From: Intoshia linei
Lineage: Eukaryota > Animalia > Orthonectida
Direction of reading: 5' to 3'
Assembly (NCBI GenBank): GCA_001642005.1
Contig: LWCA01000052.1
Span: 1-64,000 of the forward strand
Length of the DNA: 64,000 nt
The notes under the pieces were generated by a model. It did no database searches, was not told where the DNA came from, and saw only the letters and a program-made list of their open reading frames with translations. Positions 25,679 through 39,100 of the stretch are shown here, piece after piece. The translations under genes and the position numbers were made by a program. Numbering within the stretch: position 1 is the first letter of the stretch; every line of letters starts with the position of its first letter.

Positions 25679-29136
<3,458 letters not shown>

Positions 29137-31064
29137 TTATGTATTATTTATAATTTATAATTGATACTTTGTGAGACATTGAAATACAATTTAGTTTCAT
29201 AGTAATTTGGATTGTATGTTTCTACAACACATGTTATTTATTGATAAATTAGAAATTTAATTAATTTGATATAATACATAAATATATGTAGTATTTTAAA
29301 ATGTAAATAAAATTGTATTCTTAATTATACAAAGTTGAAGAGTACGTCAAAATTATCTTTCATTAGCACCATTTATTTAATTTATATAGATTCTCATTAA
29401 TTAGGTAAAAATGGAAATTTCACGGTTAAACAAGTAAATAAAATGAAATTATAAATAAAACATCGGTGTCTTTTATGTTTGAATTTGTATAGCTTATCCG
29501 TATCGTATTCCATTAAAATGTAATGCTCATTGAACATTGGTAAAATCAAACTGACTTGTTTTTTATGCAAAATAAAATCAATTTCCATATATAAAATCAA
29601 TTTTAGACATGTTTCAAGTGATGAATTAAAATTTAATAGAAAGTTTTTAAATAATACATTTATTATTGTCATTTTAACATTTTCTTTTGAAAAGTTTTGT
29701 GAATATTATGAACAATTTCCGTACAGTGTAATTTGAACTTTAAAATGAAAAGTTTAAAGTTTAAATGATACATGTATAATTCACTAATTGTTGATTATAA
29801 TAAATAAATAGTGCCATACCAAACTCTCATTAATTTGTTAAATTTTTGATGCATGAAAAAGATGATGCAAGTTACAATTAAGATTTAATCTGGTATCAAG
29901 TAGACATTGGAGTAATGAGTATTTAAATAGTTCACTAAATTAACTAAAATAACTCCACTTTACCCTTTTAACACTTTAAGACTCGAGAACTGCATATGCA
30001 GTTTGGAATGTGAACTTCAAATTTACTTAAACAAACTTTTTAAAAACATATCAATTTTCTTATACATTTTTTCAGGTGACTGTTGAAATTGTGGCATCAT
30101 AAAAAATAAATTTAAAACAAAAAATGTCTGACTACGAAAGTGTCAATACAGTAAATTGATAAAGTCGTTACTTTTTATCTATTTGTCAAACGTGACAAAA
30201 AGAGGCACCTGTAGGTTTTTATAAATTAGTGATATAAAGGAAAAGTTTATGAACTCAATATTGAGGAATAAATTATTGTTTATAAATCATAAATGCAATG
30301 ACATGACATTGCTCTTTAATTGTTTTTTATTGTATGCCATAAAATGTTAAATGAGTTTGTTTGCTTATTTGCATCTTTTGTTGTTTAGATTTGTTAATAG
30401 GTGTAGGACATTGACTTTTATTATCGGTTGGAATTTAATAAACTCATTAATTAACGTATTAATGATGCTAAAAAAGGAATACAAAGTGTAGTCCTATTTA
30501 CATTATAACTTATAATTTATAAGTTATACATTAAATACGACCGACTAAAATTAAATTACAACTAATTCTAACTAACCAACGCTAATTCATAGCACATCAT
30601 CATATAGTCTTATTTTTTACAGTGTATAATTACAAAAATTAAAAAGTGTATATGAAAATGCAGCGTAATAGACAAATGTGGTTATGAGCCGTAAATCTAA
30701 CACAACAACAACATTTAAGCTGAGATAGGAAATGAATCAAGTGTCTATAAATAAAAGAGTACCACCTCAAAACATATAAATAAGTTGCATTGTTTGAGTT
30801 ATAAATGTGACAATTGGATAGTCTACTATAAATAAACCGTCTGCAAAACCTGAGCTATGTGGTAATGTTATTTGTAACATTTAGCAATCGAGATCATAAA
30901 AATCGACACAAAACTAAATTATGATGATTCGCAATGATCTTTCAGGTGTTAATTTAGGATATCCATATGCTCATCCAAAATTGACAATTACAAATATTTT
31001 GTGATTACATCAAATTATTATACCTTGTTGACCAAAATATACCTTATAAAATATTTCCAATATA

Positions 31065-32039
31065 ATGTCAAAACTAACAAAGACTGATTCAAATTCTTCA
31101 ACTGTATCACTCCCCACATCTAAAAAATACATGGAAAAGGGAATTTTACCATTCAAACCTTTTATGGAAGAACTCGACAATATAAAGAGTATGGCTCAAT
31201 CCATGAACCAAATTATTAACGAAGAAGATGTTATCGTTGATTCTCTTAAAAACAAACGAGTCGACTTTTGTAAGTGGAAATCACTTGATAATATCAGAGG
31301 TAACACATTCAATAACGTATTCAACTACAAACATATTTTTGATTCATGTTGTGAAGAACAATCAGATGTGGAGCAAGATTTTTTCAATGTAAAAATTTAC
31401 CAAAAAAGTTTTTTAAAAGAATTTGCTAGTCAGAATGATATTACTTTCTCTGGTTATGAAGCGGATTGTAATTCCAGTATTTCAGAATCAATAATAAATG
31501 ATATTGGTGATTTTGTCGATATTGATGAAATTGATGGTACTGATGACACTGACGAGTTTGTGTCGGAATCAGATTCTGGGTCTAGTTCTTGTAATTCTGA
31601 TTTAGAATTTCGAGAACTTGAATCAGAATATGAATATGATTATGATGAATTGGAAAGCATTTCTGACATTTTTCAAGAATGTGATAATGTGAATTTTACG
31701 AGTGATGGAGGGAGTGAATGTTATAATAAATATTGCAATTTTTATCAATTTGATTCAGATGATGTGTTTCTTGAATCTATGGTACCTGGGAATTTTTTTG
31801 ATATTGGATTAAGTATTAGTTCCGATTCAAATAAATTTAATCAATCTGTTGACCTTTTTACAAAACAACTCAAAAATTTTACATTTAAAAACGAAAAAAA
31901 TAAATCACATGACGTTTATCCAGTACAAACTAATCCACTTGATTTGTCCATTAAAAAGATTGAAAGAAAAAGTCACAATTCTAAAATTCAACATTGTTTG
32001 CTTCAAGAAATTTCAGGTTTGCATTTTAGTTTATATTAG
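31065..32039 (+). CDS. Acidic low-complexity protein of unknown family with RVxF and PxDLS motifs; probably spliced near 32016
   Basis: 324-codon ORF in very AT-rich DNA, Asp/Glu/Ser-rich, containing KNKRVDF and NPLDLSIKK. Candidate donor TCAG|gtttg near the 3' end. Confidence 0.7.
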   Translation: MSKLTKTDSNSSTVSLPTSKKYMEKGILPFKPFMEELDNIKSMAQSMNQIINEEDVIVDSLKNKRVDFCKWKSLDNIRGNTFNNVFNYKHIFDSCCEEQSDVEQDFFNVKIYQKSFLKEFASQNDITFSGYEADCNSSISESIINDIGDFVDIDEIDGTDDTDEFVSESDSGSSSCNSDLEFRELESEYEYDYDELESISDIFQECDNVNFTSDGGSECYNKYCNFYQFDSDDVFLESMVPGNFFDIGLSISSDSNKFNQSVDLFTKQLKNFTFKNEKNKSHDVYPVQTNPLDLSIKKIERKSHNSKIQHCLLQEISGLHFSLY

Positions 32040-32139
32040 GGGTCGAAATCTGTTCTGTGTGGTCGGGTGAGATTTGTTTGTAAAGTTATTTGCAAGTTTT
32101 AGAAAGTTACAATTTTAGGGGTAGTTGTAGTACGGTTAC

Positions 32140-32800
32140 GAAATTTTCTGAAAATACTCAAAAATTAAAAAAATAAAACTTTTAGAATAATTTTTAAATT
32201 TTTAGGAAAAATTTCTACAAAAACATTAAAGCAAAAAAATCAATGAATTTTAACAAAAATTCGAAAAAATAAATATTTTATAGTAATTTTAGCACTGTGA
32301 TGAAATTTTCTTAAAAAAATAAGTTAAATTAATGAATATTCACTATAATTTCAATAAATTGAACTTTGAGGGTAATTTTTTGATTTTTACCACAATTTCT
32401 TAAAAAACAAAAGAATCAATGAATTTTAACAATAATTTTAAATGAAATGATGATGAAAGAGATAAAATTTTCTTAAATAAAAAGATAAATCAATGAATAT
32501 TCACCAAAATTATAAAAAATAAAACTTTAAGAGTAATTTTTTATTTTTACCAAAATTTTTTTAAAAAAATGAAGAATTTTAACCAAAAGTCAAAAAATTA
32601 AATATTTTATTGTAATTTGAGCACCGTCTGATATTTTCAAAAAAGTATTTATATATTCAAATTAATACAACCAAGAATGCAAAAAAATAAAAGCTTTGGG
32701 TAATTTTTAAATTTTTACGAAAATTTCTATAAAAAAATCAGTGAATTTTAACTAAAATTACAAAAAATTAAACTATTAAGGTAATTCCAACATTTTCATA
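32140..32800. repeat. Degenerate AT-rich tandem array
   Basis: Repeated aatcaatgaattttaac, aaaactttaagggtaatttttt and ttttaccaaaattt variants. Confidence 0.7.
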
Positions 32801-35597
32801 AAAATATTAATTGTTTTTGAAAAAAATGTAAATATCTGACAACCGTCATGCATCAATTATTTACCCGGACATTAATGGAACAAGGTTGCCGACCTCTCAT
32901 GTTAAAATTACATAATATATCAATATATCGTATACATAAGTAAATAAACACAATACATAAATAAAGTAAGGATTATTTAATTACATCAAAATACGGTAAA
33001 ACCCTTGATAGCAAACATATATATTATCATTCGATTTTAACTAAAGAATCTGTCAGTATCACTATTCTATATACAATTAGCTAGTTCTGTAATTCATCAA
33101 TCCTATCGATTCATATGCGTTTTTTGTATAATTATATTTTTTAACGGGGTATGAAAACCAATCACCAAGACTTACCACACCGATGACTTACCAAAACCAG
33201 AAAATAAACGTATTGCTTTAAAAAAAATTTGCAGATATATTATACATAATGTAGGTAATTATATTTAAAAACCCATAGCCACCTCTAAACAACTTTCATA
33301 TCGGATTGTTTGATTTATTAAAAAAATTGTTATAAGCATGTTAAATTCCGACAAACAAAAAATTTAGAAAAATATTTTCCAAGATATACCATTTTCTGAC
33401 TGAAGTTTAACATGAGCTATTTAGTATAAACCGCCGTAATTTTATGGGCCAATGTATAATTAAAATTCTTGTAATGAAAAATCAATTTTAATGATTGGTT
33501 GTAATTTAAATGCCTTTATTATATGTATTGTAATATTGTATTTATTGTCCAACCCGATACAGATTATTTGCAAGAAAAATTCAAATTTTCAAAAAAATAA
33601 TTTGTAGTCATTATTATGTTAATTAAAAAAAATGGAGATGATGATAATTTTCATTTTTAAATGTCACTACCGATCTCGACCTAACCTAATTTATTGTTTT
33701 CTAATAAATTTAATTCTTTACTACCTTCTAATAATTATGAAAATTGATAAAATTAAGATGAAAAGATGAAAGAGTATCTGAAAAAAAATCAATTTTAACA
33801 TCTGCTAGTTTGTAATCTAATATATAGCGTTTCACAATATTACCATTAATAACATTACATATTTAAAATTTAGATTTCATTAGCGATCACGATATTTTAA
33901 TTTTGATTTAAAAAATGAAAAATATTTCTGAACCTTTTGTTAGTTTTAACATTTTTATTATAATATCTTGAGAGGAAGCTTAATATCCATGATACAGCCT
34001 GGGAAGCAAAATTAAGACAACTGGATTTATTTGTATTATTTTATGTTTATGTCGTGCTTACTGAGTAATAAAAGTAGTAGTATTTTATTGAAACGTATTT
34101 CCAATTTTATTATAATAAAATCTTTCAGATAATAGGGCATATGTTGGGTTGTCAATCGTACTTTAATTTTATAATACTCCTTTATTCTGAAAACTATGGC
34201 TGATTTAATTATAAGTATAGTCAGTTTAGAAATTTTATTTAACAATTAATTAAGCATCATTTACAATGGGTATTTTAATAGGTAAACTATTAAATATGGT
34301 AATTTTCAAAACGCAATGGTATTTATGTCGACATTGTAAATTTTGCCACATTTATTTAATGTGTAAATTTCAAATCAAGATATACATTTAACAATTTGTA
34401 AAACTAATTTACATTGACGTTATTATAATACAAATCTATTCATGTCCAATGGACATTGTCCATTTATATTCCCAGATGGATTTTAACCGTAGGGTGCAGA
34501 TAGCATCAAAAGACATTTAAACATTAATAAATTGAGATACTTAATATGTATTTAATGTTTTAAAGCATTATTGACGGCGAAATTAGTTTTTATAAACAGT
34601 AAAACCAGAATCATGCGTTGATTTGTTTTACAGTAAAATACATATATAATATACATTGCATGTTTTAGGATGAATGATTTTGCACCTGTTAAATGTGATT
34701 TCCTTTTTATAGAAAATATAGACCAGTATCTGGCACAGTGAATACACTTAAACAAAAAATTTTCATGAATGAATATATTTATATTTTGACGTTAATTTGT
34801 TAAAATTACTACTAAAATTGAATCCAAAAATTATAAATCTAAATTTAATAATTGTATTTGATAGGCAGTGATATATTTAACCATTTAGTCAAATTTAAAA
34901 TATGAACATTAACATTGAAAACACAAAAATGATAGTTTATTGGGTGTAATCTAAACCAATTAAATGTGAATATACGTAAACTATACGCCTGGGGGTTTAT
35001 ACATACAATTGTTATTGTCTAGATTTTATTTTAAATAAGAGTAATTTAGTTAAATGGTCACATCAAATTTAACACGTGCAAAACTATTCAAGCTTAAGCA
35101 TTTATCATTATATAACAACTCAATTGAAGGTTTATATACAAAATTTCACTTTCAAATTCAAGGCACAAAAATGTACTTTTTTTTATTATAAACGCGAATA
35201 TTGTTTACAAAATAGTTATTGGACAAATTTTACAAGTTGGTTTATATTTTAGTCAGATTGATGATTAGTGAATATCGGAAATAACATTAACATTATTATT
35301 TCATTAGTTTTTTCAATTTCGGTACTTGTTTCAAGTCTTAATTTTTTAAAATGTGTATATTTTAATGTCAGTGGGTGAAGATAATTAGCGCTCATCTTCA
35401 ATGATTACAGTTCATCGACTCGATCGACATATTGATAAATGTTATAAATTGTACAAACATTTATAAATAAACATCAAATGATTATAGTATAGTTGTAATT
35501 TTATTTTACAACTTGTAGTGTTTTTTCAATGTTTTAATGAGTTTCAAATTTAGAACCAATAATACAGGATACATATGAAAGAAAATTGAAAAATATA

Positions 35598-35936
35598 ATG
35601 CCATTATCTGTAAGCTCACCGAATTTGCCCAATATATATTATACAAAAACCAAAAGATCAAAATCATGCCCTTCGAGATGTATTGAAGAATATGTAGGGT
35701 CTGAATTGAGAAAGTATGGTGATACGTTTCATGAAGAAATACAAGTAGTTTTTATAAATATTTTTTTTCATGTTCAATTTTAGTCATACGAAAAGATTTC
35801 CAAAATTCAATTATTTCTTGTCACGATTACTGTTGTGTGCATGAACTGTTTCAATGTTTCATTTCAAGTTATTCAATTAATATTTAAAAATGTTGTATTA
35901 ATTATTTTATTATTTTTAAATTATTTTGATTTTTAA
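35598..35936 (+). CDS. Candidate BH3-only protein (BAD-like), exons 35598-35744 and 35784-35936
   Basis: RSKSCP (14-3-3 mode-1 type) directly precedes YVGSELRKYGDTF (BH3 LxxxGDxF). A 39-nt GT-AG intron leads in frame to a hydrophobic C-terminus, and AATAAA follows the stop. The 5' end may extend to an acceptor at 35553. Confidence 0.65.
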
Positions 35937-36181
35937 TAAATATTTTTATATACAAATTCTCATTCGATAATACCAAAAAAAAAAAATAATAGATTTAATT
36001 TCCTAAAATGATTTTAATTTTTGAATATTAAAACGAAGTCAATAGAATATTTTTTTATTTTAAAATCAAATACAAGTACTAAAATTTTTTAATGCTTTCT
36101 AAGTGGGTGTTTTAGACTTAAAAATGATGAAACACTTAATCGAAACGAATATACATGAAACATTTAATGTAATTTACAAAT

Positions 36182-39100
36182 TTATGCAATATGGAATATT
36201 GTTCCAGTTCTAGTTATACCTATTGTTCATAATGTAAAAATTTAATGAAATTGAAAAATACCGTTGAATACGAAAAAATTGTGTATAACAGAATCACTTT
36301 TCGAAATAAACTAAATTTTTGTATATAAATGTATAACGCAAACATTGTAATCGTATTACTTTAATCACATCTGCAGACAAAATTCCCCCAACTATTGAAC
36401 AAATTGAAACCATAGTAATAATAAAATTTCTAAAAATATTGATAAGTCTAAAATAGTAATAAACACAATATTTCGGGTCATTCTTTTTATTCTGACCATT
36501 AATTTTAATTTATAATAGAAAAATAACGTGATCAACACTTTAAATTTTTTTATTTAGAAAAAATCCAAAATAATGAAATTCTTTACTTATTGGAAATTTA
36601 AGACTCATTATTTTAATTGACAACCCTGGATTATGAAACCACTTGTTAGAACATATTCTAAATATTACAGTGTTCCTCGAATACTAGAAAATTAATGAAA
36701 TAATTAAAATGAATGGAAAATGTTTTTATTGCTTGTTCTGAAAAGTAGAAATTAGTATTTATGGTTAGTATTAAATTTTAAAAAGATGTTCTTTAGCTCA
36801 ACCCAGTTCAGTAATTTTTAATGCACTACCCAGCATATATCAAATGTGGATCGATGGAACGAAAGCAGTCCTTATAGAAAATTTTATATAAAATAACTAT
36901 CACTGATACAAAAGATTTTGGAACGTCTGTAATATCCTAATCTTTACAAAATCACCGGTTTAATTCCTTTCAGATTAATACAGAAATAGGGAAGCATTTA
37001 CTTTTCGAAGGCCGCATTAACGTCTCCAAAAAATTTAATAAGGCCACACATTTCTAAATAAAATTTAATCAAATAGAGCAGTGCTTCTCATGGGGTGACT
37101 GGTCACCCAAAATTGTATTATTTTAATATAAGGTGAATACAAAAATTTTCGATAATTGGGGTGAATTATAATTTTTAAGCATATTTTATTCAATTTAGTA
37201 AAATTGTTTGAGAAAAAATCAAAATTTTACCAACCCTTCAGAAAAAAACCGCTTTTACTAATATTTTTCTGAAAAATATCCATTTTACCAAACTTTTAGA
37301 TCAATAACCCTCTATCTCAGGGTATCTTAACCGGGGTGCTAGAATTAATTTCAAAGGTGCTAGAAAAAATATTCTTATTATTTAAATTTTGAATAAAAAT
37401 CTAATTAAACGTATTTTCAAATTGAAATTTACTTTATCACTCAAATAAGTGTATATTGATCTATGCAAAAAATTCGCAAATAGAACAATGAATACGTAAA
37501 GTATGGATTTACTGGGCTTATAGAAATTGGTAAGAATGATAGAGCTCAATGCATGACTGTCATTTTATAATATGTTATTCCAATCTTAAACCTTGTCGTC
37601 TAAACCTAAAACACCTAGAAAAACATTCAAACGATGAAAATACATCGATTGATAATTTTCTCATTAATAGAGCAAGATATGACCAAAAAGGGAAAATAGC
37701 TGTTGTAGAACAAAGTTAGACGTTATGATTTTATCTGAATTTTGGTGTTCACAAATTAATACACATCCTAAACTTTCTAAATTTGGATTGGAAAAAATTA
37801 GCCCTTTTCCAACAACATATCTCTGCGAGAAAGCATTTTCAAGTATAATTAGATCTTATGATAATTAATTTATAATATAGCTATGCTCCACATAAAATCG
37901 AAAACTAAAAATAGATTGGGATAAGTTGTCACACGATATGAGAGTTGCCTTATCTCGAACAAAACCCAGATATGATAAACTTGTTTCCGATAAACAGTAA
38001 CAAAAATCTCACTAATTATATAATCAGTGATGATTCATCACAAATTTATAATGTAAATTAAAATATATTTTTGATTACATAGTTTTGTTGCTTTTATACA
38101 CAAATTATATTCTAGAAAAACATTGGTTTAATTGATACATAATTTAAATCTCATCAAATACAGCATTTATTGATTAGGTTCGATATGGTGATTTTTTAAA
38201 ATCTCAATATAATACGATTTTTAAGTTGAATTTTAAGGTATCATTATATAATTTTTCAGGGATGCTAAGTTTAAAAAAAATTAAGAAACCCTGCTCTATT
38301 TGATCCCAAAAGAAAAAAATCTAATTTCATCAACCCTTAAGGAAAAAACCGCTTTTACCAATATTCTTCTAAAAAATCCCATTTAACCAAAAATTAATAT
38401 TTTAAAAATAATATAATCAATAAAATAGTTTTAAATGAAAAATAATTCAAATTGTTCAGAAGGCCGCACCAAAACGTCAATAAGGCCGCACTTTCCCGAC
38501 CTCTGGTTTAATATTACATTAAATAAACGTAAAAAATGCAAATTACTAGAAATAAACAAAATACCTTTGGAATAAATGTTCATTGAAGAAATCTTTATAT
38601 TCGTTGTAATCTCGTAAAATTATAGTTTTTATCTTTTCTGTTAATTCAACATTGTTTAAATCGGAAATTTTTAATTCTTTGTTAATTTCTGATAAAACTA
38701 GACATACTTATTTATTAGTTAAAATATATACGACAAAATACCAAAATAAAAAAAATTAGATTATCCTAAATTATCCATATTTTACCTTAAACAGCCTGAT
38801 ATATGTTACTTATTGGGCAATAATCGCCACCAATTTTTTAATATAAAAAATTAATTAAATTTGTTATGAAATCAGTTGGTAATCATCGGTCATAGCTTTT
38901 TAAAACAAAAATAACCTTTTTCAAGAATAAAAACAGCATTTTGAGTATATTGCCGTTTACTTTTATTTTTTTTAAGCCATTCTTCAATAGATATTTGGTC
39001 TCGTCTATTGTATTTAATAAGCTAAACATGTAAAAAAATTTAATATGAATTACTTTCAATATTTCTTCATCCTGATCATTAAGTCTAAACAGAAAAATTG

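What the first reader, a model, noticed from the sequence alone, without database searches (positions are those of the whole stretch)
35554..35940. Candidate BAD-like BH3-only gene: 14-3-3 site, BH3 motif and hydrophobic tail in about 100 aa
Seen: splicing a 39-nt GT-AG intron (35745-35783) gives MPLSVSSPNLPNIYYTKTKRSKSCPSRCIEEYVGSELRKYGDTFHEEIQ|SYEKISKIQLFLVTITVVC...VVLIILLFLNYFDF*, followed by AATAAA. Known: vertebrate BAD has RSRSAP (Akt/14-3-3 site) shortly before its BH3 YGRELRRMSDEF, and the BH3 consensus is LxxxGD(E)F. Order and spacing here closely parallel BAD. The GD core and hydrophobic tail are more like BIM/BIK/HRK, and a second possible phosphosite is SVSSPNL. Inference: a phospho-switchable apoptosis initiator in a reduced invertebrate genome. 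Such short disordered proteins are easily missed by homology search.
Basis: partly seen in the sequence, partly recalled or inferred. Interest (0 to 1): 0.85.

Follow-up and report, generated by a model that had tools for sequence, protein, structure and literature searches.

The report
Unannotated BH3-only-like gene in Intoshia
A small, expressed and spliced gene missing from the public annotation of the parasite Intoshia linei encodes a 99-residue protein that looks like, and in a computer model docks like, a "BH3-only" cell-death trigger, although it is not a relative of vertebrate BAD.

Summary
The ATG (35598), the 39-nt GT..AG intron (35745-35783), the stop (35934-35936) and the AATAAA are all as written. 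Transcript-derived contigs of two public runs carry the exact 35744/35784 junction. The exon starts at an acceptor at 35554 and is spliced over a 6.4-kb intron from a non-coding exon ending at 29140. The junction codon is a stop, so the 99-aa ORF is complete. By shuffling, this ORF over the RNA-defined exons has a chance probability of about 5e-5 to 9e-5.

The genome is Intoshia linei. It has two Bcl-2-fold genes, two 14-3-3 genes and at least three caspase genes.

The peptide has no detectable homologue, no Pfam hit (BAD included) and no paralogue, and it is absent from the protein database.

[quoted passage not shown] Its protein-language-model features lie nearest BMF/BIM/NOXA clusters, a weak pointer.

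It is predicted to sit in the canonical groove of the Intoshia CARD–Bcl-2 protein: ipSAE 0.82 against a best control of 0.03.

Verdict: a real gene (about 0.85), probably a lineage-specific tail-anchored BH3-only-type protein (about 0.55). BAD orthology is not supported, and the 14-3-3 switch is untested.

The parts
29105..29140 (+). 3' end (minimum extent) of an upstream non-coding exon. Its donor GT is at 29141-29142. It lies antisense to exon 1 of the NAD-dependent epimerase (GALE-like) gene, whose ATG is at 29136 on the minus strand.
   Evidence: The 30 loose letters before 35548 in the 1033-nt contig of X4 and the 1035-nt contig of X5 map uniquely to 29105-29134. GT follows 29140. The epimerase exon was identified with Pfam PF01370.
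29141..35553 (+). 6,413-nt GT..AG intron. It contains an unrelated 324-aa acidic ORF (31065-32039, +).
   Evidence: The contig reads ...29140 joined to 35554...; the aligner's single mismatch is T (29140) against G (35553).
35554..35597 (+). 5' UTR part of the second exon. It holds a 4-codon uORF (ATG 35574, stop 35586-35588). The junction codon T|AA closes the main frame upstream.
   Evidence: Both RNA contigs start at 35554, right after AG at 35552-35553.
35598..35744 (+). Coding exon, residues 1-49. The N-terminal half is polar with low model confidence, followed by a predicted amphipathic helix at residues 26-44.
   Evidence: GC is 0.33, like bona fide coding sequence of the window (0.29-0.325).
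35655..35672 (+). R20-S-K-S23-C-P25, an exact sequence match to the mode-1 14-3-3 motif RSxpSxP. Function untested.
   Evidence: the only RSxSxP in all six frames of the 64-kb window.
35682..35732 (+). BH3 motif: h0 I29, h1 V33, small G34, h2 L37, h3 Y40, small G41, D42, h4 F44, H45.
   Evidence: In the predicted complex the interface is residues 27-49, with L37 and D42 in the canonical places.
35745..35783 (+). 39-nt GT..AG micro-intron, phase 0, ending in an in-frame TAG.
   Evidence: The joint 35744->35784 appears in X4 (side 85) and X5 (side 37) and is absent from the DNA run X1.
35784..35936 (+). Last coding exon: residues 50-99 plus the TAA stop. Residues 57-99 (35805-35933) form the hydrophobic tail.
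   Evidence: Kyte-Doolittle 19-residue means of 1.0-2.3. RNA contigs cover only 35784-35868; the rest is read from the genome.
35935..35940 (+). AATAAA poly(A) signal overlapping the stop codon.
   Evidence: The poly(A) site itself was not observed.

Best explanation
A three-exon gene of Intoshia linei, missing from the public protein set, encodes a 99-residue orphan protein that most likely acts as a tail-anchored BH3-only-type death ligand.

Shown: the transcript exists in two runs. Both introns are spliced at canonical GT..AG sites on the + strand. The ORF fills the two RNA-defined coding exons and cannot extend upstream.

Inferred mechanism: the hydrophobic last exon anchors the protein in an organelle membrane, probably the mitochondrial outer membrane. 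The otherwise poorly ordered N-terminal part folds residues ~26-49 into an amphipathic helix. That helix inserts I29/V33/L37/Y40/F44 into the groove of a Bcl-2-like domain and pairs D42 with the BH1 arginine (R292 of the CARD-coiled-coil-Bcl-2 protein P0003, and possibly also P0004). This would neutralise a pro-survival-like Bcl-2 and release caspase activation.

More speculative: phosphorylation of S23 in RSKSCP by a basophilic kinase, followed by capture by one of the two 14-3-3 proteins, would keep it inactive, as in BAD.

It is an analogue of vertebrate BH3-only proteins, not a detectable homologue.
For: - Transcript and splicing: one search shows the joints 35744/35784 and 29140/35554 in X4 and X5. 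Searches place the upstream exon.
- Coding: shuffles give P about 0.005 for the first coding exon and 0.011-0.017 for the last, a product of 5e-5 to 9e-5. Exon GC is 0.33, like known coding sequence.
- Motif: the full BH3 consensus is present. The strict pattern is rare (2 per 128,000 residues) and lies 8 residues after the window's only RSxSxP.
- Partners exist: two Bcl-2-fold genes, both closest to pro-survival Bcl-2/Bcl-xL among solved structures (E about 1e-10). There are also two 14-3-3 genes and at least three caspase genes.
- Predicted complex: score 0.82, best of 3 controls 0.03. That mark was reached by 51 of 78 solved complexes and 2 of 108 mismatched pairs; on eukaryotes, by 39 of 65 solved pairs and 2 of 126 unrelated pairs. 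The runs agree in at least 78% of contacts and the partner's pLDDT is at least 57.
- Geometry: L37 lies against T278, V282, S295, I296 and F299, and G41/D42 against N289-W290-S291-R292.
- ESM Atlas features: the nearest named clusters are BMF, BMF2, PXT1, BIM and NOXA/PUMA at 0.76-0.82. A control peptide from the same window retrieved none of them.
- The confirmed Bcl-2 protein of this genome has a similarly AT-biased hydrophobic tail with N/H inside (L001:1246-1449, minus strand).
Against: - No homologue was found anywhere, so no conservation or dN/dS test is possible.
- Pfam BH3-only profiles are negative.
- BH3 is a short degenerate motif found in many unrelated proteins.
- The complex predictor is untested on peptides and disordered chains, and it can score Bcl-2/BH3-like pairs from memory. 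Only one job was available, so no Leu/Asp-mutant or other-motif control could be run.
- Atlas scores below 0.9 are only leads.
- The last exon has non-coding-like GC (0.196). Its 43-residue hydrophobic stretch is long and contains N, Q and K. Its last 68 nt lack RNA contig cover.
- No clear Bax/Bak-type effector was identified.
- Translation has not been shown.
Confidence: 0.55

Rival explanations
1. It is a real small membrane protein of unrelated function, for example an organelle or ER micro-protein, and the BH3-like string and RSKSCP are chance short linear motifs.
For: It is an orphan with no homologue. BH3-like patterns arise by chance at about 8e-6 per position, so tens per proteome. 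The tail may form two membrane segments rather than one anchor. The docking score may reflect only motif likeness (caveats).
Against: The full h0-h4 + Gly-Asp pattern, its position just before the tail, the penultimate-exon rule, the Atlas neighbours and the canonical predicted geometry all coincide. The chance of a strict BH3 in one given 49-aa peptide is about 3e-4.
Confidence: 0.27
2. It is a non-coding or barely translated transcript, a by-product of the divergent/overlapping promoter region of the epimerase gene, and its ORF is accidental.
For: The first exon overlaps epimerase exon 1 in antisense. There is a uORF at 35574. The last exon has intergenic-like GC of 0.196. No annotated protein and no homologue exist.
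Against: An ORF that fills both RNA-defined exons has a shuffle probability of 5e-5 to 9e-5. The coding exon has CDS-like GC. The ATG has A at -3.
Confidence: 0.1
3. It is a true orthologue of vertebrate BAD that keeps the Akt/14-3-3 phospho-switch.
For: RSKSCP lies 8 residues before a BH3 of the form GxELR+xxDxF, an order and spacing like BAD's (BAD's own sequence is from my knowledge). 14-3-3 genes are present.
Against: The Pfam BAD profile has no match in the peptide or the genome. phmmer found no BAD among 1.84 billion proteins. Gly replaces the BAD-type Ser inside the BH3. There is no Arg at -5 for Akt. A hydrophobic tail is present, which BAD lacks. By PMC8998228, BAD-seeded searches give probable hits in deuterostomes and only potential ones in Lophotrochozoa.
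Confidence: 0.04

Closest known systems
HRK, BIM and BIK (vertebrate tail-anchored BH3-only proteins)
   Same: Each is a short protein with one BH3 of the LxxxGD type followed by a C-terminal hydrophobic anchor. [quoted passage not shown] At 99 aa the candidate falls within the human range of 54-198 aa. BIM and BMF clusters are among the nearest ESM Atlas neighbours.
   Different: There is no detectable sequence homology. Tyr sits at h3. The tail is longer (43 residues) and more polar-interrupted. A mode-1 14-3-3 motif lies upstream.
BAD (Pfam PF10514)
   Same: An RSxSxP-type site lies shortly before a BH3 with the E-L-R-basic ... D-x-F pattern, and the N-terminal half has low model confidence.
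   Different: The profile search is negative. There is Gly rather than Ser before the Asp, and no Akt-type Arg at -5. The candidate has a hydrophobic tail and is about half BAD's length (BAD's features are from my own knowledge).
Schistosome BH3-only proteins (Lee et al. 2011, as summarised in PMC7022251 and PMC8998228) and C. elegans EGL-1
   Same: These are lineage-specific invertebrate BH3-only ligands of Bcl-2-fold proteins that ordinary homology searches cannot find. They show that spiralians can keep a BH3-only/Bcl-2 system.
   Different: Those proteins were shown to bind and act experimentally. Here the evidence is a transcript plus a model.

Membership tests
BH3-only proteins (functional class of Bcl-2 ligands, polyphyletic) | A BH3 motif with four spaced hydrophobic residues (h2 = Leu), a small residue and an invariant Asp | tested here: met
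   V33, G34, L37, Y40, G41, D42 and F44, plus h0 I29.
BH3-only proteins (functional class of Bcl-2 ligands, polyphyletic) | No BH1, BH2 or BH4 motif and no Bcl-2 fold | tested here: met
   There is no PF00452 or any other Pfam hit on either exon peptide at E up to 10. The whole protein is 99 aa.
BH3-only proteins (functional class of Bcl-2 ligands, polyphyletic) | BH3 within one exon, the second-to-last, with any membrane segment on a separate last exon (PMC7022251) | tested here: met
   The exon limits 35554-35744 and 35784 onward come from RNA contigs.
BH3-only proteins (functional class of Bcl-2 ligands, polyphyletic) | Multi-motif Bcl-2 partner in the same genome | tested here: met
   Two loci, corresponding to P0003 and P0004.
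BH3-only proteins (functional class of Bcl-2 ligands, polyphyletic) | Binds the groove of a Bcl-2-fold protein through the Leu and the Asp | tested here: inconclusive
   The model supports binding: score 0.82 against a best control of 0.03, and the mark was reached by 51 of 78 solved complexes and 2 of 108 mismatched pairs. Contacts agree in at least 78% across runs and the partner's pLDDT is at least 57, with L37 and D42 in canonical positions. This is a prediction, not a measurement.
BH3-only proteins (functional class of Bcl-2 ligands, polyphyletic) | Induces Bcl-2-regulated cell death | not testable with these tools
   This needs expression experiments.
BAD (Pfam PF10514 Bcl-2_BAD) | Significant match to the family profile | tested here: not met
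   There is no hit at E up to 10 on the peptide and none in six frames of the whole genome.
BAD (Pfam PF10514 Bcl-2_BAD) | 14-3-3 binding phosphoserine site(s) upstream of the BH3 | tested here: inconclusive
   The RSKSCP sequence fits mode 1. Phosphorylation and binding were not tested.
BIM/BMF/NOXA/PUMA families (PF06773, PF08945, PF15185, PF15150, PF15826) | Match to a family profile | tested here: not met
   There is no Pfam hit. PF08945 finds nothing in the genome, although that search had no positive control. The only link is Atlas feature likeness of 0.76-0.82, below the 0.9 lead threshold.
Tail-anchored membrane proteins | A single C-terminal membrane segment close to the C-terminus and no signal peptide | tested here: inconclusive
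   Hydropathy is 1.0-2.3 over residues 57-99 and the N-terminus is polar. The stretch is 43 residues long with N, Q and K inside, and its end lacks RNA cover.

The most novel reading that the evidence does not exclude
Intoshia keeps a minimal, rewired death switch. In this reading an orphan tail-anchored BH3-only protein, gated by a BAD-like phospho-Ser/14-3-3 site, binds a Bcl-2 domain that is fused in one polypeptide to a CARD (P0003). BH3 binding would then signal straight to a CARD partner or caspase, doing in a single protein what the two-protein CED-9/CED-4 system does, without a recognisable Bax/Bak effector.
Probability: 0.12. Interest if true: 0.8.

Novelty: new member of a known kind. 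Interest (0 to 1): 0.55.

Why it matters
BH3-only proteins are the sensors of the mitochondrial death pathway. They are short, disordered and polyphyletic, so they are almost invisible to homology searches and are known experimentally in very few invertebrates. An expressed candidate in an orthonectid would show that the sensor/guardian logic survives extreme genome reduction. Orthonectids are among the most reduced bilaterians; this genome is 41.6 Mb. The finding also gives a directly testable peptide/Bcl-2 pair, and it adds a gene that the public annotation missed. The partner it is predicted to bind is itself unusual, a CARD-Bcl-2 fusion. That makes the pair a good entry point to ask how apoptosis is wired in this lineage.

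Tried and rejected
- Pfam on each exon peptide and on the unspliced 65-aa ORF gave only a sub-threshold DUF3975 hit on the hydrophobic exon.
- PDB sequence search of exon 1 gave only a chance vicilin hit, E 4.4.
- The search for homologous proteins with the 65-aa ORF (region 5-53, length window 36-114 aa) returned no candidate, not even the protein itself. So it is not in the public protein set at that size.
- phmmer of exon 1 against 1.84 billion representatives gave two hits, P0001 and P0002. Both are tandem-repeat proteins whose scores sum 5-7 weak repeats. I rejected them as artefacts.
- No paralogue and no second DNA copy exist in the genome.
- I considered that the ORF is the C-terminal end of a larger protein, because the frame is open from 35554. 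I rejected this because the spliced junction codon is T|AA.
- I considered that the 29140/35554 joint belongs to the minus-strand epimerase mRNA. I rejected this because the intron would then be CT..AC.
- The joints 32568->35455 and 33801->35754 have sides of only 21-23 nt with mismatches in AT-rich sequence. I treated them as spurious.
- AF2 of exon 1 alone gave low confidence (pLDDT 54) and only suggests a helix at 26-44.
- Each exon was searched by reference, so no whole-protein search exists.
- The second Bcl-2 protein (P0004) and the 14-3-3 proteins could not be tested as partners, because only one complex job was allowed.
Full report
**What is in the sequence.** The window is AT-rich (about 26% GC) animal DNA with micro-introns. 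The genome is 41.6 Mb in 3,520 contigs. It is Intoshia linei, because its Bcl-2 loci match NCBI proteins of that species at 99-100% identity.

At the reported place the ATG is at 35598. The first coding exon, 35598-35744, encodes 49 residues. The interval 35745-35783 is a 39-nt GT..AG intron ending in an in-frame TAG. The next exon, 35784-35933, encodes 50 residues and is followed by TAA at 35934-35936, which overlaps AATAAA at 35935-35940.

**Transcript evidence.** Six public runs hold parts of 31000-36999, and I laid four of them on it. Run X1 (2016, DNA) is collinear with the genome across the intron. Runs X4 and X5 (2024, same organism label) have no recorded library type. Their contigs skip canonical introns of genes on both strands, so they derive from transcripts. 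The own-genome DNA search finds only one, unspliced, copy.

X4 has a 276-nt contig and X5 a 228-nt contig covering 35554-35744 joined directly to 35784-35868 and 35784-35820.

Both contigs begin at 35554, the first base after an AG. A contig of 1033 nt in X4, and of 1035 nt in X5, ends on 35548-35583 with one mismatch. Its preceding 30 letters map uniquely to 29105-29134 on the + strand. The genome reads ...ATTTAT|GT at 29140/29141. So a + strand exon ending at 29140 is spliced to 35554 over a 6,413-nt GT..AG intron. Read on the minus strand that intron would be CT..AC, so the joint does not belong to the minus-strand gene.

The upstream exon lies antisense to exon 1 of an NAD-dependent epimerase (GALE-like) gene, whose ATG is at 29136 on the minus strand. 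The long contig probably merges the two overlapping transcripts.

The frame of the ORF is open from 35554, but the junction codon is T|AA. The protein therefore cannot extend upstream, and Met at 35598 is the first in-frame start. A 4-codon uORF starts at 35574.

RNA contigs stop at 35868. The last 68 nt of the ORF are read from the genome only, and DNA contigs also break in this low-complexity stretch.

**Is it coding?** I tested the two exons separately, without joining them. For shuffles of exon 35554-35744, an ATG-initiated frame stays open for at least 49 codons to the exon end in 0.5% of cases. For shuffles of 35784-35960, phase 0 stays open for at least 50 codons in 1.1-1.7% of cases. 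The product is 5e-5 to 9e-5.

The first coding exon has 0.33 GC, like confirmed coding sequence of the window (0.29-0.325). The last exon has 0.196 GC, like intergenic DNA. However, the hydrophobic tail exon of the Bcl-2 gene of this same genome has a similar look. I put the chance that this is a translated gene at about 0.85.

**Homology.** None was found.
- Pfam gives nothing on either exon.
- The BAD profile and the BIM-type BH3 profile find nothing in the whole genome.
- PDB sequences give nothing.
- The word-indexed search over proteins of 36-114 aa finds no candidate, not even the protein itself, so the gene is missing from the public annotation at that size.
- An exhaustive phmmer against 1.84 billion representatives returns only two tandem-repeat proteins whose scores are sums of weak repeats.
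- There is no paralogue.

All searches were exon by exon, by reference.

**Why BH3-only is still the best reading.**
1. The motif is complete: h0 I29, h1 V33, small G34, h2 L37, h3 Y40, small G41, D42, h4 F44. The strict pattern occurs only twice in 128,000 six-frame residues of the window. RSxSxP occurs once, 8 residues upstream. The expected chance of a strict BH3 in one given 49-aa peptide is about 3e-4, and the joint expectation with RSxSxP is about 1e-9 per position.
2. [quoted passage not shown]
3. Partners exist. There are two Bcl-2-fold genes, both nearest to pro-survival Bcl-2/Bcl-xL among solved structures at E about 1e-10. There are also two 14-3-3 genes and at least three caspase genes.
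4. The ESM Atlas feature search puts BMF (0.82), BMF2 (0.81), PXT1 (0.77), BIM (0.76) and NOXA/PUMA (0.76) clusters among the nearest named neighbours. These scores are below the tool's 0.9 line and count only as a lead. A control ORF of similar size from the same window retrieved only anonymous bacterial clusters.
5. In the complex prediction of the exon-1 peptide with residues 185-350 of P0003, the model supports binding but does not show it.

**Details of the complex prediction.**
- The score is 0.82 and the best of 3 controls is 0.03.
- The mark was reached by 51 of 78 solved complexes and 2 of 108 mismatched pairs. On eukaryotes it was reached by 39 of 65 solved pairs and 2 of 126 unrelated pairs.
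- The runs agree in at least 78% of contacts, and the partner's pLDDT is at least 57.
- The interface is residues 27-49 of the peptide.
- L37 lies against T278, V282, S295, I296 and F299. G41/D42 lie against N289-W290-S291-R292, which is the BH1 NWxR arginine that pairs with the BH3 aspartate in solved complexes (PMC7022251).

The tool warns that it is untested on peptides and that pairs resembling solved complexes can score from memory. The result therefore shows that the motif is BH3-compatible with this groove, not that the two proteins bind in the animal.

**BAD or not.** The resemblance to BAD is limited to an RSxSxP site placed before a BH3. Profile searches are negative. The residue before the Asp is Gly, not the Ser of BAD. 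The site lacks Arg at -5 of the Akt consensus. The protein has a hydrophobic tail. In architecture it is closer to HRK, BIM and BIK. BH3-only proteins are regarded as polyphyletic (PMC11463336), and those of schistosomes and nematodes cannot be linked by sequence (PMC8998228). An orphan BH3-only protein in an orthonectid is therefore plausible and would be a new member of a known kind.

**Surroundings.**
- Upstream lies the epimerase gene (minus strand), which overlaps the candidate's first exon.
- Inside the long intron is an acidic 324-aa ORF with no Pfam match and no RNA contig.
- Downstream, a ThiF-family (SAE1-like) gene on the minus strand converges on the candidate. Its last three exons are at 36154-36431, with 42- and 49-nt introns, and its next exon starts at 38567. 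That leaves roughly 200 nt between the two 3' ends.

**Verdict.** The BH3-only-type function is supported by several independent but purely computational lines (confidence 0.55). BAD orthology is not supported, and the 14-3-3 switch is an untested sequence match.

Noticed in passing
L001 (G000:C3300:4403-7675), ORF L001:1459-2514 minus strand; protein P0003: The Intoshia protein annotated as 'Bcl-2-related protein A1' is a fusion. It has an N-terminal CARD (PF00619, residues 8-90), a coiled-coil stretch, and a Bcl-2 domain (PF00452, residues 248-338). After GGW there is a 42-nt intron. The next exon (L001:1246-1449, minus strand) encodes a hydrophobic tail that the public 391-aa model appears to splice out.
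   Followed up: partly
G000:C2803:19660-19887 (-); G000:C2038:106976-107293 (-): The whole genome has only two CARD matches: the Bcl-2 fusion and one in a 988-aa open frame. There is a single weak NB-ARC match, on another contig. None of the caspase loci (C3277, C2268, C973, C86) showed a CARD. The apoptosome arm may be reduced or rewired.
   Followed up: no
window 29002-29140: The + strand 5' exon of the small gene overlaps exon 1 of the minus-strand epimerase gene in antisense. Its splice donor lies 4 nt beyond the epimerase ATG. In both RNA runs the assembler merged the two transcripts into one contig (1033 nt in X4, 1035 nt in X5).
   Followed up: partly
window 31065-32039 (+): A 324-aa Ser/Asp/Glu-rich ORF sits inside the 6.4-kb intron on the same strand. 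It has no Pfam match, and no contig of any of the four runs was listed over it.
   Followed up: no
window 36154-36431 and 38567 onward (-): The 3' exons of a ThiF-family (SAE1-like) gene are confirmed by a 1671-nt RNA contig. Its introns are 36216-36257 (42 nt), 36311-36359 (49 nt) and 36432-38566 (about 2.1 kb). It converges on the small gene.
   Followed up: partly
window 33169; 35325; 35759: Some run contigs differ from the window. A 16-nt deletion at 33169 appears in X1 and X2. C>T at 35325 and T>A at 35759 (inside the 39-nt intron) appear in X1. None falls in the coding sequence.
   Followed up: no
window 35574-35588 (+): A four-codon upstream ORF lies in the 5' UTR, 10 nt before the main ATG.
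   Followed up: no
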